NCBI GenBank assembly: GCA_051294905.1
Contig: CM119386.1
Span: 2,232,001 to 2,296,000 of the forward strand
Direction of reading: 5' to 3'
From: Botryllus schlosseri
Lineage: Eukaryota
DNA: 64,000 nucleotides
Positions 22,901 to 64,000 of this stretch are shown here, one piece after another (position 1 is the stretch's first letter; every line of letters starts with the position of its first letter). The notes below the pieces were generated by a model. It worked only from the letters and a program-made list of their open reading frames with translations. It had not been told where the DNA came from and ran no database searches. The position numbers and the translations under genes are program-made.

Positions 22901-25900
22901 GTTTAAAATTAAGTAGCTTTGTTTTAAAACTGGCGAGTAGAATTAGTCTGAAAGCATATCCCCTTGAATAAGTAGTACAAGAGCTAAAATCAACTGGTGT
23001 GCTTGGAAAAATTGAAGGTACTTGGGTACTGACCACCTCTTATTTCATCCAACTTCTTTTCTCAGTACCCATGGAAGGAATCAAGTGAGGATTGCTGCGC
23101 GGCTAAGAACAAGTGCAAATGCAATCCGAACTCGGAAGAATTGGCTCGATTGTGTAACACGACGCAGGGCACGATGCCCAGTAACTGCAGCCAAGGGTGG
23201 GAGCCGTACGTCGCGAGCGTCATGGCTTCTGAAGACGACACAATGTGCTGCGACATTCAGTGCAAGTGCGTCAGCTGTGAAATGGGGAATGGGACAACTG
23301 TGGAGGTGAGATGCTGTTTTCAGCAGTACTATTAGGAAACAAAACAAAATGTGATGAAATCTCCGTTCAACTTGATATGTTCAGTGTTCTTGGCTAATGT
23401 TAGGGTGCCGATTAGTGCCATTAGTTTGTCGCTATCATCGACCATTAACCCTTGTATAGACATATAGTTGAACATGACAGATGACTTCAAGGAGGACGAA
23501 TCTTGGATATTTTGATTATTTACATTTGATTCCCAGTTGCTATATATTACATTACAAAAACACCCATGAAATTAGATACATTTCACTAGTAAGTGGGGAA
23601 AACAAGGAGGTGACGAATTAAAAGTATCGATGAGATGAAAAATAATAAGATTTTCGAACATGGCACCCCATATAACACAAAACGGCATAAAATAAATGAG
23701 TTATAGAAAAATGCTGTTACACAGTGTTGGAAGAAATATCGGTATCGACCATTAAAGGTAAAAATGCGTGATATGCGTGACTTCACAAGTGTCAGAGATT
23801 CTTAATCGAAAACTGACAGGAATGGGACTTTATATATTTTGTCCGTGATGTTTTTGTGGCATATGCACCGACTCATGAAAGACATACACACGATCTGCAC
23901 TTATGCCCAGAAGCTCACAAACACTGGATATAAAACTGGGAGTGGTCTGAAAAATTGCCACTTCAGTTAGTCATACCAGTTGAGGAAAGATAGAGTAGTA
24001 CAGTTTTTGAAGCCGAGAATCTTAGAATTCAGATTTTTACAAGTGGAAAGTACTTCTTGGAAGTACAGAACTTCAATATAAAATTGAATAGCATATTCAT
24101 ATTGAAATGAACCTGAATATTTCCAGCTGACTCTCTTCACGGTTAATCGTCAGCAACTAGTTGAGAATTGGAAAGAACATTGTATATCAGCAATCATATC
24201 TCGAAATATGACGTCACCAGCATGAAATGAGATCTCGAATAAGAGAGCGTTCATGTGGAAAGTAGTATATGGATAGATTTGCATTTTTTATCATCTTACA
24301 ATTTTCAAACATGATCTACAACCATTCAATATCCTAATGAATTGATCATTTCATTGAATTTCTGAGATTTCTGTGACTTTCTGTAACTCCTTGAGTTGTT
24401 TTGACATGATTTGTATACCGTCTCTTCTACTTGCAATGGAATAGAAATTAGTGACAGTACATTTAATTAGGTATCAACAGTTACCACTTCGACCAGCACT
24501 ACTTGGCATCTCATGTAATTGAATTCCGGGACTCATGCCAGCATTTGTAATTTGTCTTGATTCAATATTTACAAAACTACCTAAATCGTTTCAGATTGGT
24601 GCCGCGTGGCAGGAGACGGTCGGTTGCAAGGTTATAAGCTACAGGTGTTCCGAAAAAGTATTGACAAACGGATGCCACGAGTTAGTCACTCAAGAACGGG
24701 ATGTACCGTGCGAGTATACATCACTGGGAGATTATGAGGACAAAAATTGTGCAGCAAACACATACGCGGTACAGGCTACGCCACAGGCAGGCTGCTGTCC
24801 GGAGTTCAAATGCGGTGAGACTGGTAGTGTTGGGTTGTGAAAAAATATTGGCTAGTAGCAAGGGCAAGCCCACTATTGATCATGTAGAATTATATGACGC
24901 ATCTTTGACTACAAATTCACTACTTTAAAACATTTCACAGTATTTTTTTTGTCATTTCAAACGCAGGGAAATACAAAAGTTGAGAGTTCGTTCTGGGAGT
25001 TTTTCTGCATCTCATTCATGATATTATTCAGGCAGTCAATTTGAACGGATTCGTGATTATAATTCGAAATACTCGGATGTAAGAAGACTTATTATGGTCT
25101 CGTTGTATGAATTTTGGTTGTTTTCTGGTGGAATATTTCATTTCAAAACCACTGCTTGTAATAAAGAAAGAGATTTATTTCGTCAACCCATGACGCCATA
25201 AAATAGAACACTTATAAATATCCAGTATTTGACAATGGTAATATTGGTAAGTAAAATAGAAGTGGAGGTATAATTATTGATTTGTAATGCTGTTCATATG
25301 AAAAACTATTCAAAAGTATGTTCAGGAGCATGTTAATTAATTGGATTTATATTCTCCTCAAACCTGGCACTTGCCAATGGTCAATGTAACTTTGAAAATC
25401 ACAGCCTTAGCTTCCTTAAATTCCTAGCTCTTTCAATTATCCTGATACTTGACGTACTAACCACACTAAACCACGTATTAATCGATTTCTTCCAGTTAAT
25501 TGTCCGACCAAGGACTGGTCTTGCAACTCTTATGCCGAGACCAGAATCGCCAACGCCTCAAATCCTCGTTGTCCCGGAGAATGCATATGTGCCAACCCGC
25601 TCGGGAAAGAGCAAAACGACTGGTGCTTGAAGGAAGCCGTGTGTGGCGGAAACGAAGTGTCCAGTCCGTTGGCAGCCTTGGAATCCGGCACTGTTCACGC
25701 GGACAAATGCTGTCCGCAGTACAAATGTGTCTGCGCGGAATGCCCGTCTTCAGTCGTGTCATTAGATGCTTTAACTCCGAACACAGACAATTGTGAGGTT
25801 GCAGTTGTCAGTCCTTCGGATGCGGATAAAAAATGTTGCCAGAATCACGAAATTCAGTGTGATGTGTCTTGCACTTGCCCAACGATAGATCTGAACTGCC

Positions 25901-28900
25901 AATCGGAAGAGGCGGCTTGCCTGCAAACTACAGGTGAGTGCCAACGAATATATAAACACTAATTTAAAGTAGCCATTTATTATCAGGGTTGTAAAAGTTC
26001 CAAGGTTCCCAGTCACAAGTCAATCTCACTTTTATAGTTTTGGCTTGAGTCAAGTCGAGACATTTTCAATCCCCCACCGAGTGCAGTCAGTCACTGTCCA
26101 AGTCAGTGAGCAGCGGGTCGAGTACGAGTCATAGTGTTGTGACATAGCGTTGTTGCTCGAGTCATGAGCAATGACTCAAGTACAAGTCGAGTCAGTTCAC
26201 AAATTGACTCGAGTCGAGTAGAATGTAGTCGTTTTATCCGTTTAAAAAATGACTCGAGTCAAGCTAAGTCACCAAAAATTAGTGACTCAAGCCGGACTCG
26301 AGTCGAGTCATGACCCGAGTCATTGCAACCCTGTTTATTATGCTACATAACTATTTTTCTTGCTCCTATTTTAGATTCCAATGTACGTTTTATGGAACAT
26401 TGAGTCTGAAAATTGTTTATTGTATGATCCGTGCTTATCAATTTTGACCTTATTTTTTTCTCTGCAAGTAGTGTGCCTGTCGTATATGTATTTGAATACT
26501 GCCTATGCACTCGATTTTAAATGGTATTGATATGTGGCTAGGCTCATTTGAACATGTAATGAGCTATTATATAACAGTTTTTTTCAATCACAATCTTCGC
26601 AAGTAACAAAATGTACTCTGTTTAAAGAATCAAAACTTCAAAATTTGGCTGTTGTACGAGCTTTTCTTGTATACCAGAAGTATGGTACTCCATCATTGCA
26701 TTGATCCAGCAGACTTGATAGCGCTTATCTATGGACTGAACTCATCGGTGAAATCTCTCGCCACCAAGCCCGATTTCAGCAGCAATAAACAAATTATGCT
26801 CATACTCATATTTGCAGTAATTGAGGTCCTTAACCTCGTCAGAGTGAAAAGAGAAGTCCGTACGCGGTTATTTTTTAATTATCACCTAACCAGTTGGACT
26901 GGCCTAATCGAGATGCTGAAAATGTTGTTGCAGTAGATTTTGAATCTTCAAATGCTCTTTGTCATGGAAAATTGTTCCAAAGTCGTTATTTGTGTATGTC
27001 CCGCATCAATCTATGAAGTATTTTTTACACCCAACATCAAGTTACGCCGACAAGAACAAGGCAATCATAACCATCGGATTTAGATTAAAATCTCCTAGCA
27101 ATATTTACTACTATCATTATACAAACACAGAAGCACATATGTTTGATGGTGGCATCGCATTTGCTGGATTCCCTAAGACGAAAACGTTTAATGGAGGATG
27201 TTATGATTTTATAAGACTGCGTGTTGTCCTGTCAACCTACAATTACGTTTACTCATCATAAAATGTGTTCACAATTTGAGGATCCCTAGTCCGTATAGAG
27301 ACAAAATTCCACAAAATCTTTTCCAGTATCAACGAATAAATGCAATTGCACGGTCAACGCCGAATGTAAATGTAATCCTGACCTCTGTCCGACCGTGACA
27401 TGCAGTGAATGCGAGATCATGGACGAGAGGGATCCTGTGGTGAATTCATTGGCACCGTGCTCTGGCAGCTGTTGCAAGATAAGAACGTGCATAAAAAAGC
27501 CTTGCCCGTCCGTAACGGTGCCGAACATACCGCCTCTGTGCCCTTTCCTCGAAAAGATAAGTAGCATTTTGTGAATGAAAATACCGAAGTAAATATAGGT
27601 GATAATTTTCGTTACCAGCACAACGAGGTATACGGCAACGATAAATGCTGCCCGGAAAGAATCGATCTCAAATGTACAACAAACACTTCCGATTGCCCGA
27701 TTTCAAGCCCGACTACGTGCGAACCTGGATATCAACTCGAGACTATCCGCGCTGCCGATTCTACTGACATGAGAGTGCGCATGGCTATGAACTGCCCGAT
27801 GGTGGACGAGTGCTGTCCGATTCGCGTATGCGTTTGCAAGTCCTGCGTTTATGAAGGAGGAAGGATGGACCTTGGCGCATCGCCTGTCACTTCACCGGAC
27901 GGGTAAGATTAGCGCAGTGATAGATAGATCATTTATTCAAATTGTTTCACACGGAAAACATGAAAATTTCAAATTATTCATCGGTATAGATAGGGAAGAC
28001 ATGATACGTCAATCCCTTCTCTGTAACACAAAGATTATTCGTTACCGGTTATCATTGCATTCATCACGGACTCTTCCTTGTATTGTTCCGCCGAAATGTC
28101 CTTGAATTCGCACTGCTTAGCAAAGGCACGGCGTTTCTGAACGTACTCAGACATGGTGTTCGAAGGCTGCTGATTCCTATTGTGGCTAACTCATGACCCG
28201 CATAGACAAGAGTCTTCTTTTTCACGTACAAGCCCTCAAGAAATTTCATCGCATCCGTAAACGTCGATTCTTCCTCAACCAGCGAAAAAGATCCAGACGA
28301 CAAGTACCCTGCCATTATACTGAACCTATCCATCTCTGAGTCGCCATCCCTTCTGGCAGCATCAAGGGAAACTTTAGATACGCCTTTATTACGCCCATCC
28401 AGTGCTTGAACGCCTGAACAGCATCATCATCCCTTGGCACAGCCTTTAACTTGGATACGCGAATGAGTGTCTAGTTCGACGCGATAGTAGATCTTTTCAG
28501 TTAATAAAATTCTGGTGACCTCTATTTCACAGAGTATCCAAGGCTTGTATTAACTGAAAACGTGCATTATACGCGACACAGCTAGGCCACCAACTATTAG
28601 GTACCAATAAATAAATTAGGAGGGAGACAATATACAGTGGAGAAGAAATGTTATCAAGTACTAATTCGTTAACTATGTAAAGGACGAGACAATCGCACAG
28701 ATCGATCTAGAACCTATGGCCATGTCCTGAACAATATCCTCTGCTTCTCATGCGGGGCTACGAAATATAATCGACTTGTTCTATACAAATCTATGTGATT
28801 AGACTCAAATAAAAATTTGTAGATTTGTAAGTTTGCTTGGAAAGATCTATCTGAGACTTGTTTTTACCTGTTAATGAAACACATTTCGATGTGCATATTG

Positions 28901-31900
28901 ATGTGTAACATTATTTTTTATGATGCCTGAATGTTTCATCGGAAGTTGGATCAGTTCAAAAACATGGGCTCCAGTTTGCCTATATAAACTAATTTGTCCT
29001 AAAATATTAGTCATCAGACATGCTTGAAACCGATCATGATCAAAATTATGTGGTTTGATGTGATGTATATGCATGTGCATTGTCCATGTATTAAATAGAT
29101 AAATTCCTTTATCAGCTGTTCCAAATACACCTGCAATCAGGAGCAGAAACGTGATGATGGTTGCTATAACGTCACTGTCCAACACCCCGAGTGTGTGCCT
29201 CCGCCACCTACTGAATGCTACCAGTCAGTTACTACTGAGAGGCCATCTGGCGCATGTTGTGACAATCATCAGTAAGTAGCCGAAGTGTGCAATCAATAAT
29301 CGATCAAATAATTTTACCATCGTTTTCATCTATAGGGTACAGAATAACCCCTGTAGCTCGAGCTACAATCCAGGACCAAGCAACTGTACTTACCCGGCAA
29401 AACGTGAAGTTACATCTGAACAGGTTGGCGAGAATCTATTTTGCAACAGTCAAAACTGTATTCCAAATTAAAATAAATACACACACTTAAAATAAAACAC
29501 TAGTTATCTTACAAGTTATGGAAACATGAATACTTGAACATTTGTGAATCGGATGCTACAGTAATATAATGTATGGTAATGCTAATATATCTTTTATTAT
29601 TAGGATGGAAGCGGGTGTGCTAATCCGAATTGCCCAATCGCGAAATGTGTATGTACCGCGTGTCTGGATTCGAATAACGTTACTCACTCTATCGGCTCGG
29701 AATATACTGCCGAAAACGGGTGTGACATCTACACTTGTTTGGAAGGTAAATCAAAAGGTAAACAAATTGCTTGATTCATGTAAATATCAGAGGATTGCAA
29801 TCTAATTCTCATCGTGATGAACTAAAAGACCTTCTTGTTGACTTGTAGTTACCTACCTTTATGGCAATCTCAGAAATAAACTTTTTAAATAAACCCTTTC
29901 AGAACGTTATTATATCGTGCTGCAACTTTGAATTCACCCCTGCACCGAATTGCTACAGAGGTGTGGCCTGTTCTACGGCCCTAGATGCTGCATGCCAGCC
30001 TGGGTTCTTCTGATGCTCTTTAAATCCTTAATCCAATTGAAGTTACAATATGGCATCCTGTGTTGGGGGGAGGGGCTGCCAGTAAAACCGCACTTGAGCT
30101 ACTGCAAAAACTACAACATAATGTACTCTGTTCCTTATCATAGCTAGGGCCCCAAAGGGGCCTGGTTGTCCATCCAAGTTGTTGCTGAAGAGATCCGACA
30201 GTAGACCAGCATGTCCACATTCAAATCGAAATATAAGCAATTTGTATTAAATTAATACCGGTCCGTCCTCAAGATTACCGGACCACTACCTGACCTATCG
30301 ATCTCACCTTCCCTAACATGCCACATCATTTTTGTCGCTTGCTTTTCTATATTATCTTTTACTTTTCGTTCAGTGTGGATGCCTCCTCTTTATATCGCCT
30401 AGGCTAAGGTGGGAGTCTGATTTTAAAGACTACTCCTTACTATCTATCGCGATTTTTGTGGTGTATTGAACTGATAAAATTGCTAATAAATCGAACCGAA
30501 GGTAATATATATCAATATGTTTCAGTTCAGAGAATAAAGCAATAAGATAGTAAGAGACAAAGTGACACTGTAATGGTATCAATAAATCATATATCTTAGA
30601 ACAGTGATACATGATCCGTCGCTGCAAATCCAGCTAATTCATGAAATGTTTGCGATTATTTACAAACAGCTTGTATAATCATGAAACTTTCCCCAATTGC
30701 GTAGAAGCGTCGTCATTCATGAAGCTCGTAACTTTAGTACTCCATCTGTTTCTAAAATGAGAGTTAACCAGTGACTGTACGCTGTCTGTATTAAAATATC
30801 AAATATGCAATATCATAGTTTTTTAAATCATCAAGCATTTTTTGACTAATTCTACTGGAATCTACTGAATAAATACTAGAGATCGAGTTTACTGGACCAC
30901 ACTCTTGCCTTTCATTCCATGCCACCACATTCTGTCGCTTGTCCTTTTATCTTATCTTCTACAACTTTTCATAAAGTGTTCATACGTTTACTATACATAG
31001 CCTAGGCCCAAGTAGTTGTCTGATTTCTCCTTCTCCAAGTCGTTTCGACACCTTCCTATCTTTTCATTGTATCGGAAGCATATGGTGTGACAATTTGATG
31101 AAACTTTTATTAATAAACTGAACTAAACTGAAGTGAATTCCCAATGCTCTAAAGCACTGATGCCATACTACAACAAAAATACTGCTATCCATGTTTGGAT
31201 TAAGTCACTACCTTCGAGTCACGAGTCATCTCGAGTCATTGCACATTTTGACTGGAGTCAAGTTGAGTCAATCGATTTTCGAAGGTGACTCGAGTCAAGT
31301 CAACTCACGATTCAAGTCAAAATGAATTTTCGAAGTACGAGTGATGATGCAAAGTCATTACATTTTGCTGGGTGAGAGACAGATTAATTGGCCATTTATT
31401 TGGAATCAAATAACGTATATAACTGCTAATAAAATAAGTGAGTAACTGGACAGCTACATGCCACATTCTGTTATTATCAGCTAAAATACTGGATCGAATA
31501 CGAACCCTCGAGAAGTTGCAACTAAACAAATTCATATGGTACAATACACTACCCATCTTCACATCCGGGAGAATGGAACGCATAAACTATATCTGTTCGA
31601 TTTAAATTATACAGGAGGGTTAGTAAAGGTGAGGACTGCGCAATGTAAGCTCTGAGCCATCTAAGAAACAAAGGCGCGTTGCTATTAGATTAATCAACTA
31701 CTACCATGACAATGCACGCTGTGATCATTTCGTACCCGGTCAACTTATTTGTGATGTAACAATGGAGGATCAGTAAGAGGTGCAATCAGTGAATGACTGG
31801 CTGCTCTCGCAAGTGACATTTCGCGAACAATCCGAACATACATAAGGTATGGTGATTTAATCGACACCATTTACTTGATGAGTTGAAATTGACTCTTAAA

Positions 31901-34900
31901 TTTTGCTCCGAGTCATGAGTCAATCATCATTTGTGAAGCGCTGAGTGAAGTCAAGTAATTTCTCAAGTAATTGCTCAGTTTCCAGTTTAAGTCTTGGTAA
32001 ACACCCTTTATATAACTCTGTTTAGTGATATCAAATGGTTCGCATTTATAATATACGAATTTCCCTCACTTTTAGCACGTTCTGGTCGCATTTTCAATTA
32101 CCTGTACCAATAGACGAAATCCCAATAGTGTGGTTACTTTACTGTTCTTCGAAATTATAATGAAATGTCTGTCTTGGCCGTGTGAGTCTCGAGTCATATA
32201 GCTTGGTTTGAGTCATGCGTAATGACTCGATTCCAAGTCGAGTCAATACACAAATTGACTCCAGTGAAGTCATTTCCGTATTTTGAGAAAATGACTTGAG
32301 TCAAGAAGAGTCATCAGAAAATCGTGACTCGAGTCATTTTACAACCCTGTTCAAAATAGTACATTTTCTGTTAATTCTCTCTTTACAGGTATCCAATTTT
32401 TTCTCTTAACCTGAACAAAAAACATGTGTTCTCAAACCTGAATTCGTTAATACTTATGTGCATTTCTCAAGCTTATTTGCTGCACCGTTCCCCGAACTGT
32501 TGATTTTTGTACTCAGATTCAAATGCTGGATGTGCAGTACCGACATCGGACAGGCGGTATTGCGTCACCACACCTATACCTCGGAAGATCTGTGAAAAAG
32601 TAGGATGTTGTTATGATGGAACTGCACCGATGAATGCACGCTGCTACTTATATGTCGGTAAGATTTCATTTGGACTATGCATTGTGAATTGTGTCGATTT
32701 ATACAATATTTTGTGGCTATCGAGTTAGTCACATGCAGTGTTTTCTCTTCAGCAAGCAAGTTACTGCGAACAAAACATATATATTACGGTTGTTACAACA
32801 CAATTATACTTTCCTCTGAGCTTGTAAGTGTAAGTGAGCATTTTACAATATCGAAGAACTACCGTCCTGTTTTACCATTAGTGACATGTGCATGGCTGGG
32901 AAACAATAGTTTTCCCAAAATTGAGGCCTTCCATGGTATCGAAAATCTTTGTGGCATTGTTTCACAATTGGAAGTAACACAATGACACGGTGTTAGCAGA
33001 ATATCTTACTACAATCATTCTCGCATCGACTTTTCAGAAGCAACATTTGATACAATCAACGTCCGAGTGGTGTAAATTTCATGATTAGCTCAACTTATTT
33101 TACTTTCAGAACCAGCAGAGACATGTCCCATTCTTGTAAAAAAGGAATCTTCTTGCCCTACACCCTCTTGCAACGCACAGTTTGAGGTGCTGAAAGAAGT
33201 TCCTGTTGCTGGAGAATGCTGTCCCAACCGTACTTGCATATGCAAGGTATGTTTTGTGTTAAATTTGGAATTTGAGTAGCCAGTCAAAAATTAATGCAGC
33301 AAGCTGGGTCACAATTAACTCTTTCCTTCTATAGATTGTTCATGGTTACTCACATTACTGCGACACTGATATCCAGTTTGTTGTGGTGCACATCAATGTA
33401 ATCAGCAGTTAAAAGCTACAACAACTTTGCAAAACTATTACGTTATTTACCCTTAGATGAATTTAGATTGTTTATCTCTAAATGTGAATTTTGTCAACTT
33501 GTGAACTACCACCACGACCTCCGACCCTTGCTGAGCTGTGTATTGTTTGGAGCCGATTTTTTTTTATTTAGGCTATTAACTAACAAATATTGCAAATGTG
33601 AGCTATTTTCACACCCGGCCCATCATTTTACTTGATGTTAAAGAAATCAGAACCAGATTCATTGCATTTCAAAATAACTCGACTATAATAGCAGTCTTGA
33701 TTCCCAACATTTAGACCGATGAAATGTTGAAAGAAGTTTGCGACAACTATCGGAACGATACGAGCTCATGTGCAGACCCTGGAAACATGGTACTGAGACC
33801 GAATGGTAAATTTGTTGATCATCAGTGCTGTCCGCAAAAGGATTGCGTCTGCAAAGAAAAGGACCAAATAAGATGCCAACGAAAGTATGATACCTAGAGC
33901 GTTTTTTTTTTGTCAAAAAAGGGAAAATTTGGACCTGAAAAATCAAAATTTTGTCTTTTTTGACATAAACAAACTGAATTTTGACCTAATTTCGACTTAA
34001 CGTATGCAAATTAGGTGTTTTCCCACATAATGTTAAAATTATACCACTTATCTTAATTTCTGATTGGAACTGGCTGAGTAGTTTTGTCTGAAAAAAAGTT
34101 TTTGGCTTAGAAGCAGGCAACTTTTTACATGAAAAAAACAATATTTTAACAAAGTCTAATACCATGAAGAATTCCAGTGGTTACAATATGTATTATGGTG
34201 TAAATAATTTTAAAAAATTGCAGTACAACGAGAGACACTTTCCTACATTCTTGGGTAGAAAGTGCATGTCCATCTAAGAAGCTTGCCAAGGACGTTCAAC
34301 AGCAGCAGTTGTCGGCTCAGTTGTTGCTTCATTCCAACAATGTTGTCTACATCACAATTTTTCATCACGCGCTTCTTATATAAGAATGATGCAATGCCCA
34401 AGTAGTCTTTCTTCAGTTAGGATATTGCGGTACGTTGACCATAACACCATGTCTACCTATTTGTTTTATTTGATTTGTTTATGATTCACAATGGGCAGAC
34501 AATTAACCGTTTGCAACGGTAAGCCTATAAAGTAGGCTATAAGCTGTAAAATATCAAATGATAAGTTCACCGACAGTGCGAAATCTATGTTACAAACGAA
34601 ATGCAGACGTCAAATAGATTTTGACTTCATGAAAAATTTTGACAAATTTTGACCTAATGCTACAATTTTGGCAAAATTTTGACAAATTTTGACATGTCAA
34701 AAAATAACCGCGCTAATGATAACATATTTGTTTTGCTATGTCGATCCCACGATATTGGTTTCTCTAGGAAGTAGCTTATCATTAAATACTGCTGCGGTTT
34801 TGGAGTATGAGCAAGGTTTCTAGTCGGGAGTAGATTGGAATACTATTATAAAATTAACTTATCAATCGTGCATGTAGGTTGATAATAACACTATAATAGA

Positions 34901-37900
34901 AAATTACCGGAAAGCTTGTCAATATACATTGAATCTCAGCAGAAGGTCTGAAGTGTAAATTTTAAGCACTTTGTGCAGGACACGCTGTTCCAATGCCTGT
35001 CATACACCAGTCAGGAATCCGATTTGAAAAATCATTTTGGTCATAAAAAAGCGTGTAATTTCACACTATATCTCGTACTCCCTGCTTTGGTGGTTTGTAT
35101 CCCCAACGGCTCCATCGAACCGTGGTTAAGAACCCCTGCCCTAGAAAAAATATGAGAATTAATTTTGTAGCAGTCCATCAACTTCGTTGGCCTGATTTGA
35201 GTTTATGTCCTTCACGCGACAGGACATGCGCCGGAAAATTCAACAAGGCCGTAAAAACATCAAATGCCAGCGCAACGCAATGCTGCGACGAATACTCGTG
35301 CGTTTGTGACTGCACAGAACAAGAATGTCCATACAAGACCTGGAAACCGAAAAGGTTCCTCATCGCTTTTACATTACTAGGCCTACAAAATTGAACCATG
35401 CTCTTGTTACATATGAAGGGATGAGGCATGTACATGCACTTGTGAATGCGATAAAGATTTGTGCGACGCATCTCGTCCCACGTGTTCGGACCACGAGGAC
35501 TTGATAGAAACGGGTACCACGGACAGAGGTTGCTGTCCTGTGTACGAATGCAGGTGCAATGCCACAAGGTGTCCAACTCTGCCTAGCGCAGACTGCAACG
35601 CCCTTCAAACTGAGGTAAATTCTTTATTACCTCTTTGTGTACTAAGGAGACATAATCCTGACTACTTTGCGCCCCGACTCATTCAAGAGATCTCTTGAAA
35701 CTCAGTGATAATGACCCCACACGATTGACTTTGTTATATCAAGAGCGTCTTGGAGCTGCAGAACATCAATATTGAATGGTATATTCCTATTGAAATGAAC
35801 CGGAATATTTTCGGCTGACACTCATCAGGGGTAATCATCAGCAACTGCGAAATTCATGCCCTTATCATCATAGTTTGTATTACCATTGTTGATATACAAT
35901 CTTTTTCCCATTCTCTACTAGTTGCTGACGAATGGCATCCGAAAATATTCAGGTTTATTTCAATATGAACATACTATTCATTGGTTGATATATGTGTTTA
36001 ACATTGATACTTTCTTTGATAATAAAACACAACCCGTAAATTCACTTGCTGCTTTGAATTATAAGTTCTGTTGCCACGACTTTCTTCAGTTGTTAGTACT
36101 GGTAAGGTTTGTTATTACCCTTCATCAATTCGATAAAGACTTAATTAATGCGAGCATTGCAAGAGAATATTTTTGTCATTGTATGGATGATTTCCACTCT
36201 TGCATAAGTAGAAATTACGAGATGCAAATTTAGTACCCTTAAATTGTAATCCTATTTCGACCTGATGCATTTGAGGTAACTGGAAAGATAAGTCAAGTAA
36301 GTCCATTTCAGAAGAAATCTTACTTCCAAACGAATACTCAATGCCACTTGTGGTCGGATTCCGTGTTTTGAGTTTTTTAAAGTTTCGTGTACAGTGTACA
36401 CACACATCACATTTCGGGAAAATTGTATCAAAATTTGAGCCAGATTCACAGGTGACTAAGCCGGGCCTCCACAGCGATTTTTGAAATTAGTTACATTATC
36501 ACGTTAATGCCCCGCATATATTCTTGTAAAATTGCTAGGTCATCCATCAGTCTCAACGACCTTGAAAGCTATCCGCGGAGCTTTTTTGAAATGGGAGAAA
36601 GTTATGACCCTATTTTTCTATTTTTCAATTATCACTTCCAGATGTAATGACTAAAAATATATCAAACTATAAATTCTCAACAATTCATAGCAATTATTGG
36701 TCAACCGCATGTGGCCTTTTGGCAAAAAGGTGGATTGCCCTGGGACTATATCAAGAAATCTGCACCAATTACCCACATTTTAATAATGTCGTTCTATAGC
36801 CTAGATTAGAACCCTGTATGAGCCAAATAGGGTGTTAAGTGTAGTTCCTTGAAAAGTTGACGTGTACCTTTTTGTCCATCTGCCTATATCATTGGACATT
36901 GTCTGTATTTGTATTCGTGAGACAATGATAATCAATCCCTTTTAATTTGTATTCCCGCGCAGTACATAATTATAGTTACCGTAATCACCGGTAAATACAG
37001 ATTTTCAAGATGCTTCCCTATTTTATTGAAGTACACTTGGAAGCCCACAGTCTCGAGTTGCTGTCCGACTGAGAAACGCTGCAAATGCAATCCCGACTCG
37101 GAGGAATTGAAGCGCCTCTGTAACGAAACCGGCCGAGAGGTTTCGGGAGGTTGCGCTGCAGGTCACGAGCCTTACGTGGCGCGAGTGATGGCCGACAGTG
37201 ACGATGGACTTTGCTGCGACGTGCAATGCAAATGTGTCAGTTGCATCACGGGAAATGGAACTGTCAAAGAGGTATCGTTGCGGGAATGTATCCAATTTTG
37301 TACGGGTGACAATTCGGAAATTTACACGATGTCTGGACCATATGACGTCATTGTACAGACTTTTGTAAAAACTTTTCATGTTCAAGTTCTTTGATTATGT
37401 AGTAGCAACTTGGAAATTACAATGTTATTTAAAAGGTAATTTGAAGCAGAGAGATCATCCATTCTCCAAATCAGTTTCACATCCAGATTTAAACTAAATC
37501 CATTTACAATTCAATTCAATTCAATTTATTGATAATCTTCATCATTTCAATACATCACAAGACTGCAATACAACGAAAGATAGGAAGATGTCGAAATGAC
37601 TTGCATTAGTCTTCGGTATCAGACACCCACTTGACCTAGGCAATATAAAAAAGGATGCATACACACTGAACGAAAAGTAAAAGAATATAATATAAAAGGA
37701 CAAGTGATAGAAAAGATGGCATGTGCCGGAAGGCGAGATCGATATGTCAGACTGTGGTCCGGTCAACTAGAGGGTCAAGTAATATTGATTCAGTAGAAGT
37801 TGTTTGTATTTCAACTTGAATGAGGCCATGCTCGATGCCTGTCATATAGCCGGCAAAATGCAAAAATGTAAAATTTTTCTCACAACTATGAGAACAATGA

Positions 37901-40900
37901 ATCTTTTCGATTTTACGATGTTTGAATTTGAACCAGTGACTCATATTGTCTGTGGTAGCAAAAAGTGCAATGAAGTTTGATGTAGCCATACCGTAATCAT
38001 TGTCCACTGAATAAAAATCAAATATTGAAACAATCACATTGAACTAGGTGATGGATGTCAGTAAAAGCATTCATTGGTATGACGTAGTAGCTGAAGTCAG
38101 CACGTATATTCACCTTGTCGTTCGTCTTGAATTTAGGCATGAAAATGCTTCAAAGATCAGTGATAGCTTATAGCTTTGTTACACATTTGAGACATGGGAA
38201 TTAAAATTGAGTGCAGTGATATCATGTTGATCAATTTGATCCTCTGTTGTAGCTCGAGTGGAGGACAGTTTGCCTGTAAAACTGATGTTCATGTCAGTTC
38301 AAAGTACTGCAGAATTTCGATGTTATAAAAAGATTGGAAAGAGTCAAAATGACTTGTTATAGATTGTTGACGCTGATAATAATCCTAATCGTCGACTTTC
38401 ATCTACAAATGATAATAAAAACACATTGTATAATGCGCAAGTATGCGGGATGAGGAATTCAAAAGCGGGCTTATTAAAATTGAACAACATATGAAGGTAA
38501 GAGGTTTCCGTAGGTTGGAATATTAGGTGAAATGAATCGATCAAAACTTGACCCACAAATGCTACTCTTCTTCATCATTATTCAGTTTAATTCAGTTTTA
38601 CTAAATATTTATCTATGAAACACAAACACGATTGTGACATCATGAGAAGATATGGAGCGGGTTGAATGAACTGTCCGTCGATACATCAGCATGTGACATA
38701 TAAGGATATATGTAAAGGTTAATTTCAGGGCTAGGGTTAGAGTACGGGTTAGTTTTGGAGTTGTGAACCCACATACCACAGTGACGTATGTTGAAGTGTA
38801 ACACGCTCAGCTGTCGTTTTCCATTGTGTCGCATGCTCAAATGCCGGACAACCGAATGAACGACTGAGAATATTCAATAAATGAATTAAACAACCACCAT
38901 GGTGAAACATATTCTGCAAAGGTTGCCAAAACAATGATTAACATTCTCATTTCCAGATCGGATCTGTTTGGAGCGAAATCACTGATTGCAAGCGTGTCGG
39001 GCACAGATGCTCGGAACAAGTGCTAGACAACGGGTGCCATAAGATTATCACAACCGAAGAAACTCTGCCGTGTACATACTCGTCCATCGGAGACTTTGAA
39101 ACTAAAAATTGTGGTGCTAATCAGTACGCCGCGGAAACTGGAACAGATGGATGTTGTCCCACGTACACTTGCGGTATGTCGATTACAGTTATCTGCACGT
39201 ATGCATGGTTGGTATGCTTCATCACAATGATCAATATATACATATTGTAATCGTGGATTTCATCTCCTAAATTATATATGTATGCCACTCCTACCATGAA
39301 TTCACTTTGATATCCTATGAATTCTAGTATTTGTAGCTTGGTGCCACATCAGTTACCAAGTCAACCGTTTTGTAATCATTGTTAAATAATATTGCTCTGC
39401 AATATCGTGTTAAATTTCTGTATTAACAATATGTGCACTAGCACTAGCACTAGCACTAGCACTAGACTGAACAGCATTAAAGGTTTTAACAAAATTTGAA
39501 TTCTGGTTAGTTAAACTTACGCAACGGCATACAACACCAGTTGTACTTTGGTTAAGATCTCACTGTTTATGACAAAGAAATACAAATTTCCCGCTACATC
39601 AAGTGAATGTCATGAGATTGCTAATCATTTATTATAACAGGAGTTTATTTGGTGTTTACCAGGGTTGTGACCAATTCACAAAGTTCTAAATCACAAGTCA
39701 ACTTGACCTTTATAGTTTTGGGTCGAGTCAAGTCGAGTCATTTTCCATTCATCATCGAGTCAGGATACAACGGGTCGGGTCGAGTCTGAGTCATAGTGTT
39801 AAGACTCGAGTCCAAGTCAAAGTCATAGCGTTTGCTGTTCACTATCGAGTTTAAGTTAGGCTCAACTCATTTGTGAGAAACTCCTGGCTGATATCGAAGG
39901 CCTGGGAATCATAATAGACTCATTTTCCGCACTCTAAATATGTTTATTCAAACAGATAAAGGATATTTTCTAGGCCTATTTTTCAATTTTCGGTCCTGAG
40001 ATACGAGACTTGAATAGGTCATATAGCATGTGCCGAGTCATTCATAATGACTGGAGTACAAGTCGAGTCAATACACGAATTGACTCGAGTCGAATGGAGT
40101 CATTTTCCCCTTTTTGAGAAAATGATTTGAATCAAGTTTAGTCAATGAAAAATTTTGACTCGAGTCATTACAATGTTTACAGCCTCTATTTTTAATGGAA
40201 GTCATTTGAACTGGGATTAGCTTTGCTTTGATTTCTGCACCTCCTAATGCCGTCTCTCTTTCTCACGTTAATGCAAACGATCCGTAATCAGTGCTTCCTT
40301 GACAGAACCTTGCGGTAGCTCCAACTGGAACTGCGACGACATCACACAAGTCCGACAGTCCAACGACACACACCCGCGTTGCCCGGGACAATGCGTATGC
40401 GCGTCTCCTATGACAGAAGATCAAAAGGAATATTGCTTAAAAAACGCGAAATGTGGCGAATACGAGAAAGCGGTTGATATCTCTCTCGGTGAAACCGGGA
40501 CGGCGCACACCGACAAATGCTGCGCCAACTACAAATGCGTGTGTGACACCTGTCCATCGGCCATTGTGGGGCCAGGGGCATTGTCACCTAATGCGACTAA
40601 TTGTGAGGAGGTGCGTGCCACTCCCGAAGGCCTGAAATGCTGTCAGAATCATGAGATTGTGTGTAGGGAATCTTGCGAATGCCCCACGTTGGATTTGAAT
40701 TGCCGAGAAACACAAGGATGCTCGCAGACTGTCAGTAAGTCCAATTTATAATTCTCTTGGATTCCTATATTTCTAACGATATATATGTGGACAGTATATT
40801 TGTGTCTAATTAGAGTTAGCAGGCAATGTTCTGAATCCGAAAAGTACTTGGAAATCCAGGGTTGCATTCGGAGAATAGTATTAGTTGTAAAAAGTAATCA

Positions 40901-43900
40901 TTTGTATCAGAATTAAGTCATGGTTTTGATGGGATGCACATAACTTGTGTAATTTGTAGCTTTGAACACTGGATGTGGCTAGAATCACCTCTCCATGACC
41001 AACGACAGTATACTGAAACTATAAAAAAGGAAGTTTCCCTTTGTGTACAACCATTATACAATATCTATATACACATCGTCAATGATCATCCACTGTAGCA
41101 AAGCTATCTTTAAATCACTTGGCCTTCACTCGTACTCGGTTAACTACAAAAGAGTTAGAAACAAGTAGTCTAATGCCTTTGTATTGCGATTCCATTCTTC
41201 TACAGGTTTTAATGTAAACGGTTTCAAAGCTGCACGGGCCTCGGCGAGTGCCTGATGGTATTCAATAAAAGTATATATAATTAGGAAGCAACACAATCCT
41301 TAGACACGGAATGATCCTATTCGGCACCATAAAATTCTACATCCACATCAAAATCTGACCATACTGTATAAAAACCGAACCAGCATAAAATGGCAAAACA
41401 AAGACACGGTTGTTTTCTTCGCAAATTTACCATCTCTCTAATTCCAGAATTGCTGTAGTGCCGCAGACGGTAACAATATTCTGCTTTCAGCGAAAGCCAA
41501 CAAATGCAACTGTCCAGTAGAGGCGACGTGTTCCTGCAATGTTGAGGCGTGTCCGGAGGTGACTTGTGGCAGATGCCAAGTGAAGACCAGCACTGACCTT
41601 CCTTTCGATTCCGGCTCGCAATGCGGGGGAAATTGCTGCCCCAATGTCACATGCCAGCCGAAGACTTGCACGCCTGTTGACGACATCTCCATTCCTTCGC
41701 AATGCACCTTTCTGAAACAGATAAGTCTTACATATTTATGACTGTCCGATGTCAGTGATTATAGGCATTGGTTTTGGACTCTGCAAGCCGTGGTTCAAAT
41801 TGGTTCTTTTACTGTTTGCTGAATTCGTTATATCTTTTGACTACTTCCATTTATACGTGACAGATATATTGGCAAGACTACATAATTTTTGCTCCATGGA
41901 TTTTATCAAGTAGAAAGTGGATTTGGGATATGCACGCACCACTTTTATGAGTGATATGCTCACGACGTCTGGGCGAAAGAACCCCGGAATCTGGCAGTCA
42001 GTTTTTATTCATATTTTCATCATTTCAAAACATCAAAAGACTGCGATACAATGAAAAGATAGGAAGGTGTCGAAACAACTCGGATTAGCTTTTAAGTTCA
42101 GACACCCACTTTAGCCTAGGCGAAGTAAAGAAGAGGCATGCACACTGAATGAAAGGTAATGCAGAGAATATAAGACGCAAGCGACAAAATGAGGTGGAAT
42201 GTGTCAGAGGGCGAGGTCGACGTTAGGTCGTGGTCCGGTAATCCTGAATGCTGGCTAGTATTCATTTAGAAGAAATTGCTTGTATTTCAACTTGAATGCG
42301 GACATGCTCGACGACGGTAGGATAGCCGGCGAGATGCTGTTCCAAAATAACTGATAACTGAGTACATTTTCGAAAATTGCCTCCATTTTCAGATGCATTG
42401 GTTGTTTTGTGTTAGCCGCGAAGACGCACCCTACAATTTCGAAAGTCTCCGATTAACTGCTAAAATACAAAATCTACCGTACTGCTAATTACATGAAAAC
42501 TTTTTAAATTTTCCGCTGCTATTTGGAGTAGATTTGACTTGTCTTTGAAACTACTAGGCCTACTATTTTAACCACCCCTGCTCAATAGGTCTGTTCAACA
42601 ATACCTTTTTTGTCAAATTTTACTGGCTACCTGAGAAAATTGTTATTTTGCCTAAAAAAACGCTGCACACCAATTTTGGCTCAACTCAAACCTACAGAAG
42701 CATTGCTATATGAGAAAATCTTAGTAATTAGTTATTAAAAATTCATCTAAAATTTTTATAAATTTTACTGGCTACCCATGAAATGGTTAGGTTGTATGAA
42801 AAAATGATTCACAACAAAATTGACTCAATTCGAACCCGTAGAAGCGAAGCTATTAACATTTGGGATTTCAAATTATCGTATTTACGGTGGGTAGATCTAT
42901 GAGAAGAAGAATTTGCCGCCGTAAATACTCTTTTTTTCCAATCCAAAGTTTTGTATTCCAATAACTTTGCTTCTACTGGTTGGAATTGTGCCAAATTTGT
43001 TGTGCATAGTATTTTCAAGCCACCTAACAATTTCATGGGGTAGCCGGTAAAATTTGAAAAAAATTTATATTTATTTTCATTGGATAAATCCAAAACTATT
43101 TTCTTATATAGTAACGGTTCTATAGGTTAGGATTGAGCCGAAATATTGTGCAGGGCTTTTATTAGGCAACATATCAATTTTGTCAAGTAGCCAGTGAAAT
43201 TCGAAAAAAATGTCATTGAAACACTATTCCTATTACCAATGCAGCGTGCAAAACACATCAAATTGTTTTCAGCACACTGAGATATTCACCAAAGAGGACA
43301 AGTGCTGCCCATCACGTAAATTACTTGCCTGCGACGGCAATTGCCCGGACAATATGGAGCAGACGAATTGCAGTGAAGGCTACGACCTGAACACGGCCAA
43401 CCCCACAGACTCTCCTGATTCTGCCGTACGGGCAATCGCGGATTGCCCGAAAGTGAAGACATGTTGCCCGCACACGATTTGCATTTGCAAATCTTGCGAG
43501 TACGAAAACGGGAAAAGGCTTCGACTGGGGAGCAGTGTTTTGTCCGAAAATGGGTAACAATTAATCTCTCACATTTTTTACCGATTGAGTAGTTTGTAAG
43601 AAGCCTGGTGAATGTCACAGAGATGTCATAAATTGTTGTCAAGATTGAGAAATAGGTTGAATTAGCAGTGAATAAGTACTGTGACCGCAGTACTCTAATA
43701 CAGTGGTTCTCAACCTTTTTGACCTTGCTGACCGGGAAAACTTCTAAACACATGTTGCGGACCGGGGAACCTTAAATACTTCAAATTTAACCCAGTATAT
43801 ACTTGCGATAAATGTATGCAACTCAAACGCAATTACTAAAGACTTTGAGTAAGGCTGCTTTTCTGATATTAGACACGTTATAAGCGTTATACTCGGCTCT

Positions 43901-59469: not shown

Positions 59470-59505
59470 GTAATTCACATTTCTTAGAAATTCTAACCGT
59501 CTTCG

Positions 59506-60795
59506 CATGGGCTGTGATGACTCTAGTGATGACGCGACTAGAGTCACAATTTTTTGGTGACTCGAGTCATTTTTTCAATGCGTAAAATGTCTCAACTTGG
59601 ACTCGAGTCATTGTGCATGACTCGAACCAAGTCATATGAATTGAGACTAGGACAGCCAAGACAGACAGTTCATTGTAACTTCGAAGAATAGTAAAGTCAC
59701 TATAATATGGGTATTTCGAATATCAGTCCTGATACTTGGAAAATAAGGCCAGAAACTGTTAGGACTGAGCAAAATTATTTTTTGAGTTCAAAGTGAGCCA
59801 TTCTATATCACTGTAGCTGAATTGAAAAGGTTGGTCGCACCGGATTGAACTCAAAACTGAACAGTGAACGTAATCACTTGGAATCGGACTCGAGTCACAA
59901 CAATATGGCCTTTATTCCGAGACTCGTCTCTATCTCAAACTCAAGTTGTGGTGAACCAAGCACGGGCTGAGTCCAGCTCAGATCGATAGAGTGTTTGGCA
60001 TTCGGATAGGATTTCGAGCGGAGCTCAGTTTTGAGTCTTTACTCAATAGATTTGACAGCTGACGACTGCTTGCAGACGTATACGGTTCTGCTAATTGCTC
60101 GCGATCTGGCAATCCACGGTTTAGATGTCAGGCTGGTTGCATAGTATTGCCCTCAATTACGTCATTACATTGTGTGGAGATTCTACAATGGATGTATAGA
60201 CGAAATAACACCGTGCTATCTGTAACCACTACCCGTACATCACCGTAGCTTGATCTATTCAAGTATAGCTCGCCGTATATCCCATTCATTTCAAATCGGT
60301 AAACATATATTATATCTCTCAAGCTTAATAGGAATTTAGGGACTATCTGACATACTGTTTTAGCCAATGCAAATATTTACATATAATTAAACATCAGACT
60401 TCATCCTGAAATCTTCAGGAATAAGCACAAGTTATTTATTGAATTACTGATGATGGGTGGTGGTGCCGTGTGATGTGGTTGATATTTCCACCATACACTG
60501 GGACAAACAGTTTTTTTAACGGTATTGCAATGATCAACCTTGAGTACATTCATGAAGCGCCAGGTAATCTACTATTGTGTATTGCAAGGGATGAAAAATG
60601 TCCATCGATTTGAGAATACCCCACGTAGTCAACGATGAAGCCATTCTGAATACCAATTCTTATGCAATGTTGACGCAAAATGAGTTACAGCACTGAGTAA
60701 GGTTTATAAAGACCCTATACTCATTGAATTAGACCAAGACTTGACTCCGCGGCGAATTGAACATGAGTCATCTTGACTCGAGTCAAAACTATGAA

Positions 60796-60829
<34 letters not shown>

Positions 60830-63845: not shown

Positions 63846-64000
63846 ATTACGAATATGAATGTGTTGTTTGTTGCAATAGTCAAATTCTGTACCACAAGGA
63901 ACTTATTTGATATTAATCTGTAATCATAATAAAATATTCGCGAATATTTCAACATGAATATACTGTTCATTAGTACATGTAAGTTCTTGCATATAGTATT

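What the first reader, a model, noticed from the sequence alone, without database searches (positions are those of the whole stretch)
32517..32657. Trefoil domain built into a vWD polymeric mucin as a cassette exon
Seen: a phase 1-1 trefoil exon sits between the 5th and 6th exons of unit 2 and at the same position in unit 3, but is absent from the 490-nt equivalent intron of unit 1. Known: vertebrate TFF peptides are separate lectins that bind and cross-link mucins; trefoils occur in frog integumentary mucins FIM-A.1/C.1, which are not vWD polymers. Inference: the cross-linker is fused in cis to the polymer and can be skipped without frameshift. The TFF PWC(F/Y) motif is ARC(Y/F) here, so the canonical sugar pocket is probably altered.
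Basis: partly seen in the sequence, partly recalled or inferred. Interest (0 to 1): 0.72.

Follow-up and report, generated by a model that had tools for sequence, protein, structure and literature searches.

The report
Trefoil domains inside a sea-squirt VWF-like protein
A giant sea-squirt gene of the von Willebrand factor/mucin family carries three real trefoil domains, each on its own exon and spliced into the mRNA, so a module that vertebrates secrete as a separate mucus-binding peptide is here part of the polymer-type protein; there is no evidence that the exon is ever skipped, and the protein has no mucin domain.

Summary
Exon 32517-32657 (141 nt, AG/GT, phase 1-1) and its copy at 46753-46899 encode trefoil (P-type) domains. 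They score 32.6 and 29.3 bits against a Pfam cut-off of 21. Exon A aligns without gaps to human TFF3, and its predicted structure matches only trefoil structures. A third copy lies just past the window, in unit 4. The matching 490-nt intron of unit 1 has no trace of one.

Spliced contigs from two studies join exon 5, the trefoil exon, exon 6 and exon 7, so the exon is included. No skipping joint was seen, and raw-read runs did not cover the gene, so "cassette" is unproven.

The host gene has four VWD assemblies. Its D3-type C8 keeps the cysteine that VWF uses for multimer bonds, and it ends in a cystine-knot-like pattern. It has no Pro/Thr/Ser-rich domain, so it is VWF/otogelin-like and not a mucin.

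The unit-2 and unit-3 trefoil exons share 80-85% identical intron flanks, while neighbouring exons are only 60-66% identical. The cassette was therefore copied between units later.

Both TFF3 sugar-contact residues (Asp20, Trp47) are replaced.

Earlier scan notes on the same genome report trefoils fused to other proteins; none is on other DNA. Moderately interesting, as a new domain combination.

The parts
32517..32657 (+). Trefoil exon A (unit 2), 141 nt, phase 1-1
   Evidence: Pfam PF00088 32.6 bits against cut-off 21. Gapless alignment to human TFF3. AF2 model pLDDT 82, and the Foldseek top 21 hits are all trefoil domains. Spliced contigs join 29757|32517 and 32657|33110.
46753..46899 (+). 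Trefoil exon B (unit 3), 147 nt, phase 1-1
   Evidence: Pfam PF00088 29.3 bits. 58% amino-acid identity to exon A. AG/GT flanks read.
29604..29757 (+). Exon 5 of unit 2 (ends in phase 1)
   Evidence: RNA-type contig joints 29423|29604 and 29757|32517; sequence.
33110..33246 (+). Exon 6 of unit 2 (starts in phase 1)
   Evidence: Joints 32657|33110 and 33246|33715. One 338-nt contig of run X2 spans exon 5, the trefoil exon, exon 6 and exon 7.
45695..45836 (+). Exon 5 of unit 3 (inferred)
   Evidence: tblastn homology to unit-2 exon 5 (57%); AG/GT sites read. No RNA was laid here.
47351..47487 (+). Exon 6 of unit 3 (inferred); a second in-frame acceptor lies at 47312
   Evidence: Homology; sequence; alignment A3.
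19100..19241 (+). Exon 5 of unit 1 (inferred)
   Evidence: tblastn 47% identity to unit-2 exon 5; donor read.
19242..19731 (+). Unit-1 intron (490 nt, phase 1) that lacks a trefoil exon
   Evidence: No trefoil-like ORF and no similarity to the cassette.
19732..19868 (+). Exon 6 of unit 1 (inferred)
32458..33109 (+). Unit-2 copy of the shared cassette block: last 59 nt of the upstream intron, the trefoil exon and the whole downstream intron
   Evidence: blastn block 32458-32933 against 46687-47174 at 76% identity. By segment: 84.7%, 73.0%, 80.5% and 84.6%. Neighbouring exons are 60-66% identical.
46687..47350 (+). Unit-3 copy of the shared cassette block
462..668 (+). C8 module of the third D assembly (D3-type)
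   Evidence: Pfam C8 56 bits. Best PDB matches are VWF 1075-1128 (E 7e-22) and MUC2 1044-1097 (E 4e-20). The cysteine aligned with VWF Cys1099 is kept.
8460..9687 (+). Fourth VWD domain (D4-type), split over exons
   Evidence: Pfam VWD 50.9 bits on 8448-8579. Genome scan hits at C16:2240460-2240570 and 2241316-2241687.
16044..16265 (+). TIL-like module after D4
   Evidence: Pfam TIL 24.3 bits, cut-off 24.5, so borderline.
17251..64000 (+). Four paralogous cysteine-rich units, starting near 17251, 27299, 41442 and 54411; unit 4 runs past the window
   Evidence: ORF maps, paralogue alignment A1 and tblastn. No Pfam family matches.

Best explanation
The exons are genuine trefoil (P-type) modules built into one very large secreted protein of the VWF / gel-forming-mucin / otogelin superfamily of an ascidian.

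Shown: the gene runs from about 25 kb upstream of the window to about 18 kb beyond it. It encodes three N-terminal VWD-C8-TIL assemblies, a fourth VWD, and four paralogous cysteine-rich units of unassigned fold. It has no Pro/Thr/Ser-rich mucin domain. Units 2, 3 and 4 each carry one trefoil domain on a single phase 1-1 exon, in the same phase-1 intron between exons 5 and 6. Unit 1 does not. In unit 2 the exon is spliced in.

Inferred: the gene ends in a cystine-knot-like pattern. The module entered this intron by exon shuffling and then spread within the gene. The unit-3 copy came from the unit-2 copy, or the reverse, as a 0.65-0.7 kb segment that carried its intron flanks, long after the units themselves had diverged. 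The exons are constitutive. If the protein polymerises like VWF or mucins, through a C-terminal knot dimer and D3 disulfides, it displays three trefoils per chain as a built-in multivalent binding array. [quoted passage not shown]
For: Trefoil identity:
- Pfam scores are 32.6, 29.3 and 30.3 bits against a cut-off of 21.
- Exon A gives a gapless 40-residue alignment to TFF3 with all six Cys and the conserved Arg in register.
- The AF2 model has pLDDT 82. The top 21 PDB hits and the AFDB hits are almost all trefoil domains.

Inclusion:
- GT..AG joints 29757|32517, 32657|33110 and 33246|33715 appear in contigs of two runs from two studies.
- One 338-nt contig spans four exons.

Host gene:
- VWD hits fall at four positions along the gene.
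- The C8 at 462-668 is 56% identical to MUC2 C8-3 and keeps the VWF Cys1099 equivalent.
- The D1 C8 matches MUC5AC, MUC5B and MUC2.
- There is no PTS stretch.

Spread within the gene:
- Intron flanks are 80-85% identical between units 2 and 3, the trefoil exon 73%, and neighbouring exons 60-66%.

Pocket:
- TFF3 Asp20 and Trp47 are the only side chains that contact the sugar, and D20A or W47A abolishes binding (PMC7221086).
- Here those positions are Tyr/Arg, Tyr/Arg and Gln/Lys.
- Other trefoils of the same genome keep Asp and Trp.

TFF domains are generally single class 1-1 exons (PMC7350206).
Against: - Inclusion rests on low-depth contigs (depth 5-9) of runs whose RNA nature is only guessed.
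- Contigs cannot show that a skipped form is absent, and the two raw-read RNA runs gave no reads on the exons.
- The cystine knot is recognised only by cysteine pattern. PDB sequence searches with the two half-domain exons found nothing.
- Polymerisation and any ligand binding are untested.
- The amino-acid divergence between copies A and B (dN 0.26) is about equal to the intron divergence. The non-cysteine surface is therefore weakly constrained, which would also fit a passenger module.
- No orthologue could be found to test conservation.
Confidence: 0.75

Rival explanations
1. Regulated cassette: the trefoil exons are alternatively included or skipped, so the animal tunes how many binding modules the polymer carries.
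For: All three exons are phase 1-1, and skipping joins 29757 to 33110 in frame. The intron flanks of the unit-2 and unit-3 exons are more conserved (80-85%) than the exon itself (73%). Conserved flanks are a pattern also seen around regulated exons.
Against: No 29757|33110 joint was reported in any of four runs. The donors (gtaaga, gtaagg, gtaagt) and pyrimidine-rich acceptors are strong. Phase 1-1 is the norm for TFF modules. A recent segmental copy explains the flank similarity more simply, because it stops exactly at the exon-6 acceptor and includes a relic acceptor in unit 3.
Confidence: 0.15
2. Passenger or structural spacer: the trefoils are tolerated inserts in a hinge of the cysteine-rich rod. 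They have no ligand, have lost lectin function and are slowly degenerating.
For: Both sugar-contact residues are replaced in all three copies. The 'CG..GI' core motif kept by most trefoils of this genome is lost in copies A and B. Loop 3 is shortened in copy C. dN between A and B is about equal to the intron divergence.
Against: All three copies keep an open frame, all six cysteines, the conserved Arg and intact splice sites. dN/dS is 0.44, though it rests on 43 codons. The copy was retained after a secondary duplication, and the exon is spliced in. In TFF3 most sugar contacts are made by the backbone, so a changed specificity is as likely as no specificity.
Confidence: 0.3
3. The trefoil exons belong to a separate small TFF-like gene nested in the introns, not to the VWD gene.
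For: TFF peptides are normally small separate genes, and this genome has 60 or more trefoil exons.
Against: The contigs splice the trefoil exon directly to exon 5 upstream and exon 6 downstream of the host gene. The exon has no start codon context or signal peptide of its own, and it sits at the same host intron in three units.
Confidence: 0.02

Closest known systems
Vertebrate trefoil factor peptides TFF1, TFF2 and TFF3
   Same: Same domain: Pfam PF00088, six-cysteine spacing, conserved Arg and fold. Exon A aligns without gaps to TFF3. Each domain is encoded by one class 1-1 exon (PMC7350206). They function alongside VWD-type proteins: MUC6, MUC5AC and FCGBP (PMC7177656, PMC9737082).
   Different: TFFs are small separate secreted peptides that act in trans and need divalency to cross-link mucins. 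Here the domain is internal to a giant VWD protein. The two sugar-contact residues (Asp/Asn before Cys II, Trp before Cys VI; PMC7221086) are Tyr/Arg, Tyr/Arg and Gln/Lys. There is no seventh cysteine for heterodimer formation.
[quoted passage not shown]
   Same: Shuffled trefoil modules inside larger secreted proteins (PMC7177656, PMC7350206). The ZP1 and GAA trefoils are among the structural hits.
   Different: None of these hosts has VWD assemblies. FIM-A.1 and FIM-C.1 alternate trefoils with O-glycosylated regions and are described as unrelated to vWD mucins (PMC7177656). In the five full-text searches I ran, no paper described a trefoil and a VWD domain in one chain.
VWF, gel-forming mucins (MUC2, MUC5AC, MUC5B) and otogelin
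   Same: D1-D2-D3-type VWD-C8-TIL assemblies plus a fourth VWD, a cysteine-rich C-terminal region and a knot-like end. C8-3 is 56% identical to MUC2, with the VWF Cys1099 equivalent kept.
   Different: There is no PTS mucin domain. In that respect the protein is like otogelins, which lack it (PMC5789918). No A domains were seen. The C-terminal region consists of four lineage-specific ~11-exon units with no Pfam match, found only in this gene. It carries trefoil inserts.
Other trefoil mosaics of this same genome, from earlier scan notes (alpha-amylase with six trefoils, TSR-trefoil proteins including the HrEpiC counterpart, LU-FN3-LU-trefoil)
   Same: The same promiscuous phase-1 module is used in ascidian secreted proteins. 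I confirmed 63 trefoil HMM hits genome-wide.
   Different: The hosts differ. This is the only locus where trefoil hits and VWD hits fall in one gene (searches compared; both counts are lower bounds).

Membership tests
Trefoil (P-type) domain, Pfam PF00088 | Profile HMM score above the curated cut-off (21 bits) | tested here: met
   32.6 bits (exon A) and 29.3 bits (exon B); 30.3 bits (unit-4 exon).
Trefoil (P-type) domain, Pfam PF00088 | Six cysteines spaced C-x9-C-x9-C-x4-CC-x10-C, and the conserved Arg in loop 1 | tested here: met
   Exact spacing in A and B. Arg is invariant in alignment A2. The unit-4 copy has loop 3 shortened to 5 residues.
Trefoil (P-type) domain, Pfam PF00088 | Trefoil fold | tested here: met
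   AF2 pLDDT 82. Foldseek PDB ranks 1-21 are all trefoil domains, probability up to 0.99 and TM 0.61-0.67. E-values are weak because the domain has only 46 residues. AFDB gives mostly named trefoil/P-type/ZP4 proteins, several rows unnamed, one named FMR1 neighbor.
Trefoil (P-type) domain, Pfam PF00088 | Encoded by a single class 1-1 exon (PMC7350206) | tested here: met
   The unit-2 junctions are confirmed by spliced contigs.
Trefoil (P-type) domain, Pfam PF00088 | Disulfide pattern 1-5, 2-4, 3-6 | not testable with these tools
   Needs protein chemistry or a solved structure.
TFF lectins (GlcNAc-alpha-1,4-Gal binding) | Asp or Asn directly before Cys II (TFF3 Asp20) | tested here: not met
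   Tyr, Tyr and Gln. The residue's role is from PMC7221086.
TFF lectins (GlcNAc-alpha-1,4-Gal binding) | Trp directly before Cys VI (TFF3 Trp47) | tested here: not met
   Arg, Arg and Lys.
TFF lectins (GlcNAc-alpha-1,4-Gal binding) | Measured glycan binding | not testable with these tools
   Needs recombinant domain on a glycan array, or ITC.
VWF / gel-forming mucin / otogelin superfamily | Several VWD-C8-TIL assemblies (D1, D2, D3 N-terminal; D4 later) | tested here: met
   VWD hits at window-equivalent -24883..-20577, -14692..-7195, -2601..-362 and 8460..9687. C8 and TIL hits.
VWF / gel-forming mucin / otogelin superfamily | D3 cysteine used for intermolecular disulfides (VWF Cys1099 / MUC2 equivalent) | tested here: met
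   The motif G-x-C-E-C-F-C aligns with VWF G-D-C-A-C-F-C. The C1099A construct 7KWO marks the position. The second cysteine, Cys1142, was not checked.
VWF / gel-forming mucin / otogelin superfamily | C-terminal cystine-knot domain | tested here: inconclusive
   The cysteine pattern C-x-G-x-C, then C-x-C-C-x-P ... C-x-C, is present in L036:6895-7071 and L036:8262-8414. There was no Pfam hit and no PDB sequence hit.
Gel-forming mucin (strict sense) | Large Pro/Thr/Ser-rich O-glycosylation domain | tested here: not met
   No open frame on the gene's strand from -30 kb to +84 kb has a PTS-rich stretch.
VWF (strict sense) | A domains between D3 and D4 | not tested
   Only cysteine-rich ORFs were seen between 900 and 8400. 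No VWA profile search was run.
Alternatively spliced cassette exon | Symmetric phase, so that skipping keeps the frame | tested here: met
   Phase 1-1. Joining 29757 to 33110 restores a GAA codon.
Alternatively spliced cassette exon | Both inclusion and skipping isoforms observed | tested here: inconclusive
   Only inclusion joints were found in contigs of X1 and X2. Raw-read runs X14 and X15 had no reads on the exons. Contigs cannot show absence.

The most novel reading that the evidence does not exclude
This could be the first described case in which the mucus cross-linker module (trefoil) and a VWF/mucin-type disulfide polymer are one polypeptide. That would be a natural 'Rosetta stone' fusion of partners that vertebrates keep separate (TFF2-MUC6, TFF3-FCGBP). 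Three functional lectin sites per chain would make the polymer self-cross-linking or particle-capturing, for example in the ascidian feeding net or gut lining, with a glycan specificity different from vertebrate TFFs. Inclusion might also be tunable.
Probability: 0.2. Interest if true: 0.65.

Novelty: new variant of a known kind. Interest (0 to 1): 0.45.

Why it matters
Trefoil peptides and VWD-type mucus proteins are functional partners in vertebrates, but they are always described as separate chains. A chordate relative that has them fused in cis supports an old functional link between the two modules. It also offers a natural multivalent trefoil array for asking what trefoils bind when the canonical Asp/Trp pocket is changed. 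The locus is in addition a clean example of exon shuffling caught in progress: a phase 1-1 module sits in three of four paralogous introns, and one copy still carries its intron flanks from the donor unit. The limits are plain. Trefoils are promiscuous modules in this genome, the host is not a true mucin, and no function or isoform regulation has been shown.

Tried and rejected
- Orthologue search: a profile of the largest unit exon (A1) against 1.84 billion proteins gave one hit, a 119-aa fragment (P0001, 45% identity) on two ~600-bp metagenome contigs. It says nothing about trefoil context.
- The search for homologous proteins with the 74-aa ORF around exon A found nothing. The tool sees only proteins of similar length.
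- Cystine knot: PDB sequence searches with the two half-domain exons gave only chance hits, and Pfam gave none.
- Unit fold: the AF2 model of the 147-aa unit exon reached only pLDDT 61.6, and Foldseek found nothing meaningful. No Pfam VWC hit falls in the gene. The units stay unassigned. My impression that exons 5 and 6 resemble the two halves of a VWC-like module is unverified.
- Raw RNA-seq runs X14 and X15 had no reads on the exons, so inclusion could not be quantified.
- Rfam at gathering threshold gave no hit in the window.
- Literature: five full-text searches found no paper describing VWD and trefoil in one protein. Lang et al. 2007 (PNAS) is not held, so absence from the literature is not established.
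- The AFDB cluster search with the trefoil model returned no VWD-named entry. That is not evidence of absence.
- Nested separate gene: rejected by the spliced contigs.
Full report
OBSERVATION.

The stretch 32517-32657 on the + strand is a 141-nt open segment. It is preceded by a pyrimidine-rich ...tactcag and followed by gtaaga. Read from 32519 it gives a 46-residue peptide with the cysteine spacing C-x9-C-x9-C-x4-CC-x10-C. A six-frame scan of the whole window finds that spacing at only one other place, 46767-46880. That second site lies in a 147-nt exon, 46753-46899, with the same flanks. Both exons start with the last two bases of a codon and end with the first base of one, so both are phase 1-1.

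tblastn with the neighbouring unit-2 exons shows that the two trefoil exons lie between the homologues of the same two exons, called exons 5 and 6 of a repeated unit. In unit 1 these two exons are separated by an intron of exactly 490 nt (19242-19731, phase 1). That intron has no trefoil-like reading frame and no DNA similarity to the cassette.

A profile scan of the whole assembly added a third copy just past the window end, in unit 4. It is at G000:C16:2298138-2298269, which is L035:2138-2269. It is 132 nt, phase 1-1 and has a gtaagt donor.

IS IT A TREFOIL?

- Pfam PF00088 scores 32.6, 29.3 and 30.3 bits for the three exons, against a curated cut-off of 21.
- Exon A alone finds human TFF3 in the PDB (E 7e-4). 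The alignment is gapless over 40 residues, with all six cysteines and the conserved arginine in register.
- An AlphaFold model built on 16 trefoil sequences of this genome has mean pLDDT 82.
- The first 21 Foldseek hits in the PDB are all trefoil domains: TFF3, TFF1, the ZP1 trefoil, TFF2, acid alpha-glucosidase and maltase-glucoamylase. Probabilities reach 0.99 and TM is 0.61-0.67. E-values are weak only because the domain is tiny.
- AlphaFold DB clusters and the ESM Atlas point the same way.

The refutation test 'no trefoil HMM or structural match' therefore fails.

IS IT IN THE TRANSCRIPT?

I laid four of them on 28000-33999.

Contigs of X1 and X2, from two different studies, carry five consecutive canonical GT..AG joints: 29271|29336, 29423|29604, 29757|32517, 32657|33110 and 33246|33715. 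One 338-nt contig of X2 runs from exon 5 through the whole trefoil exon and exon 6 into exon 7. These runs are only guessed to be RNA, but multiple precise intron removals mean the contigs derive from spliced transcripts. So the exon is included.

No joint 29757|33110 (skipping) was listed. Contigs cannot show that a rarer form is absent. The two raw-read RNA runs, X14 and X15, had no reads on any exon of the stretch, so inclusion could not be quantified. Skipping would keep the frame: the last base G of exon 5 plus AA of exon 6 gives GAA, the same codon as with the trefoil exon's last G. [quoted passage not shown] Strong donors (gtaaga, gtaagg, gtaagt) also suggest constitutive use. 'Cassette exon' is therefore unproven.

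THE HOST GENE.

The window is G000:C16:2232001-2296000 of a 495-Mb assembly. I fetched 40 kb on each side.

- VWD profile hits on the gene's strand fall at four positions: window-equivalent -24883..-20577, -14692..-7195, -2601..-362 and 8460..9687. C8 and TIL hits follow them.
- The C8 at 462-668 is most similar to the C8 of the D3 assembly of VWF (residues 1075-1128, E 7e-22) and of MUC2 (1044-1097, E 4e-20; 30 of 54 residues identical).
- That C8 keeps the cysteine aligned with VWF Cys1099. The position is marked by the C1099A construct 7KWO.
- The C8 of the first assembly matches MUC5AC, MUC5B and MUC2.
- Downstream of the fourth VWD come four paralogous cysteine-rich units of about 11 exons each, starting near 17251, 27299, 41442 and 54411. 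More cysteine-rich exons follow.
- About 18 kb past the window there are two exons whose cysteine pattern (C-x-G-x-C, then C-x-C-C-x-P ... C-x-C) is that of a C-terminal cystine knot. That last assignment rests on the pattern only, because Pfam and PDB sequence searches were negative.
- No open frame on this strand, from -30 kb to +84 kb, has a Pro/Thr/Ser-rich stretch.

The protein therefore has the VWF/mucin scaffold but not the defining mucin domain. [quoted passage not shown]

The units match no Pfam family. They fold poorly (pLDDT 61.6, no structural match). Their largest exon occurs only three times in the genome, all in this gene. In 1.84 billion proteins it has a single relative, a 119-residue metagenomic fragment.

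HISTORY OF THE INSERT.

Between units 2 and 3, ordinary exons are 60-66% identical at the DNA level, and their introns do not align. The exception is one block, 32458-33109 against 46687-47350. Its parts compare as follows:

- last 59 nt of the upstream intron: 84.7%
- trefoil exon: 73.0%
- first 280 nt of the downstream intron: 80.5%
- last 52 nt before exon 6: 84.6%
- sequence immediately upstream of the block: background, 39-55%

The block ends at the exon-6 acceptor. In unit 3 the copied acceptor (exon start 47312) is followed 39 nt later by a second in-frame acceptor (exon start 47351), and the second one fits the other units better. Another first-stage note (s1-262662) read this as a relic that gives the direction of copying, unit 2 to unit 3. 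My alignment agrees that a 0.65-0.7 kb cassette moved, or was converted, between units long after the units had diverged. The direction remains an inference.

The unit-4 copy shares no flank similarity. It is only 41% identical to exon A in protein, so it is older or independent.

Between copies A and B, differences are spread evenly over codon positions (11, 13 and 14). dN is 0.26, dS is 0.59 and dN/dS is 0.44 on 43 codons. dN is about the same as the intron divergence. The cysteine scaffold is kept while the surface changes fast.

THE SUGAR POCKET.

In the TFF3-GlcNAc-alpha-1,4-Gal crystal structure, only two side chains touch the sugar: Asp20 (Asn in TFF1 and TFF2) and Trp47. D20A and W47A abolish mucin binding (PMC7221086). 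In the gapless alignment, Asp20 corresponds to Tyr and Trp47 to Arg in exon A. Copy B has Tyr and Arg, and copy C has Gln and Lys. Several other trefoils of this genome keep Asp and Trp (L001, L003, L005 and L007), so the canonical pocket exists in this animal but not in this gene. Binding of the vertebrate ligand is very unlikely. Whether another ligand is bound is open.

COMPARISON WITH WHAT IS KNOWN.

Trefoil modules are known as separate peptides (TFF1-3) and as shuffled modules in ZP1/ZP4, in GH31 glycosidases, in frog skin proteins and in FIM-A.1 and FIM-C.1. [quoted passage not shown]

Vertebrate TFFs work with VWD proteins in trans: TFF2 with MUC6, and TFF3 disulfide-linked to FCGBP (PMC9737082, listed). 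Divalency is needed for cross-linking. Five full-text searches found no paper describing a trefoil and a VWD domain in one chain. I could not query domain-architecture databases, and one key paper is not held, so novelty is provisional.

Within this genome, comparing the trefoil and VWD hit lists shows co-location only at this locus (both counts are lower bounds). Earlier scan notes report trefoils fused to an alpha-amylase, to TSR proteins and to an LU-FN3 membrane protein in the same genome. The module is therefore promiscuous here, which lowers the surprise.

MECHANISM AND RIVALS.

Most likely (0.75): the trefoils are constitutive modules of a VWF/otogelin-like secreted protein, acquired by exon shuffling into a phase-1 intron and multiplied within the gene. 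If the protein polymerises like its relatives, it presents three trefoils per chain as a multivalent array with a non-canonical specificity.

- Shown: domain identity, exon structure, inclusion in unit 2, host domain content and the cassette copy.
- Inferred: polymerisation, the cystine knot, constitutive use in units 3 and 4, and any binding.

Rivals:

- Regulated skipping (0.15).
- A ligand-less passenger or spacer (0.3; this overlaps the main reading in structure and differs only in function).
- A nested separate gene (0.02), which the spliced contigs contradict.

VERDICT.

This is a real and tidy finding. It is a new domain combination within well-known families, not a mucin, not shown to be a cassette, and functionally untested. 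Interest 0.45.

Noticed in passing
window 30452-31074 (in the 2.76-kb intron upstream of trefoil exon A): A repeat in the intron is covered at very high depth in all four runs. Many reads and contigs 'go back' from 31074 to 30452-30454 (for example 73 raw RNA reads in X15). This fits RNA from tandem copies elsewhere in the genome, or a circular RNA of about 620 nt. There was no Rfam hit and no clear terminal repeat.
   Followed up: partly
window 47312 and 47351: Unit-3 exon 6 has two in-frame acceptors 39 nt apart. The upstream one is part of the block copied from unit 2 and would add 13 residues including two cysteines. Which one is used was not tested. It is also the subject of first-stage note s1-262662.
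   Followed up: partly
window 29745-29759: Unit-2 exon 5 has two phase-1 GT donors 12 nt apart (G|GTAAAT at 29746 and G|GTAAAC at 29758). The spliced contigs use the distal one, which adds four residues compared with units 1 and 3.
   Followed up: yes
window-equivalent -25124..-24924 (L032): An EGF-like cysteine pattern lies just upstream of the first VWD hit. It may be the N-terminal part of this gene or the end of a neighbouring gene.
   Followed up: no
G000 genome-wide: At least 63 trefoil-profile hits lie on 13 contigs, several in tandem clusters (C5:1.17-1.20 Mb, C13:8.91-8.95 Mb, C9:23.51 Mb). Trefoil is a much expanded module in this ascidian. Some copies keep the canonical Asp/Trp pocket and many do not.
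   Followed up: partly
window 29711, 33752-33831: Contigs differ from the assembly at several exonic positions (for example C>T at 29711, and six differences in exon 7). These are probably allelic or strain polymorphism in a fast-evolving gene.
   Followed up: no
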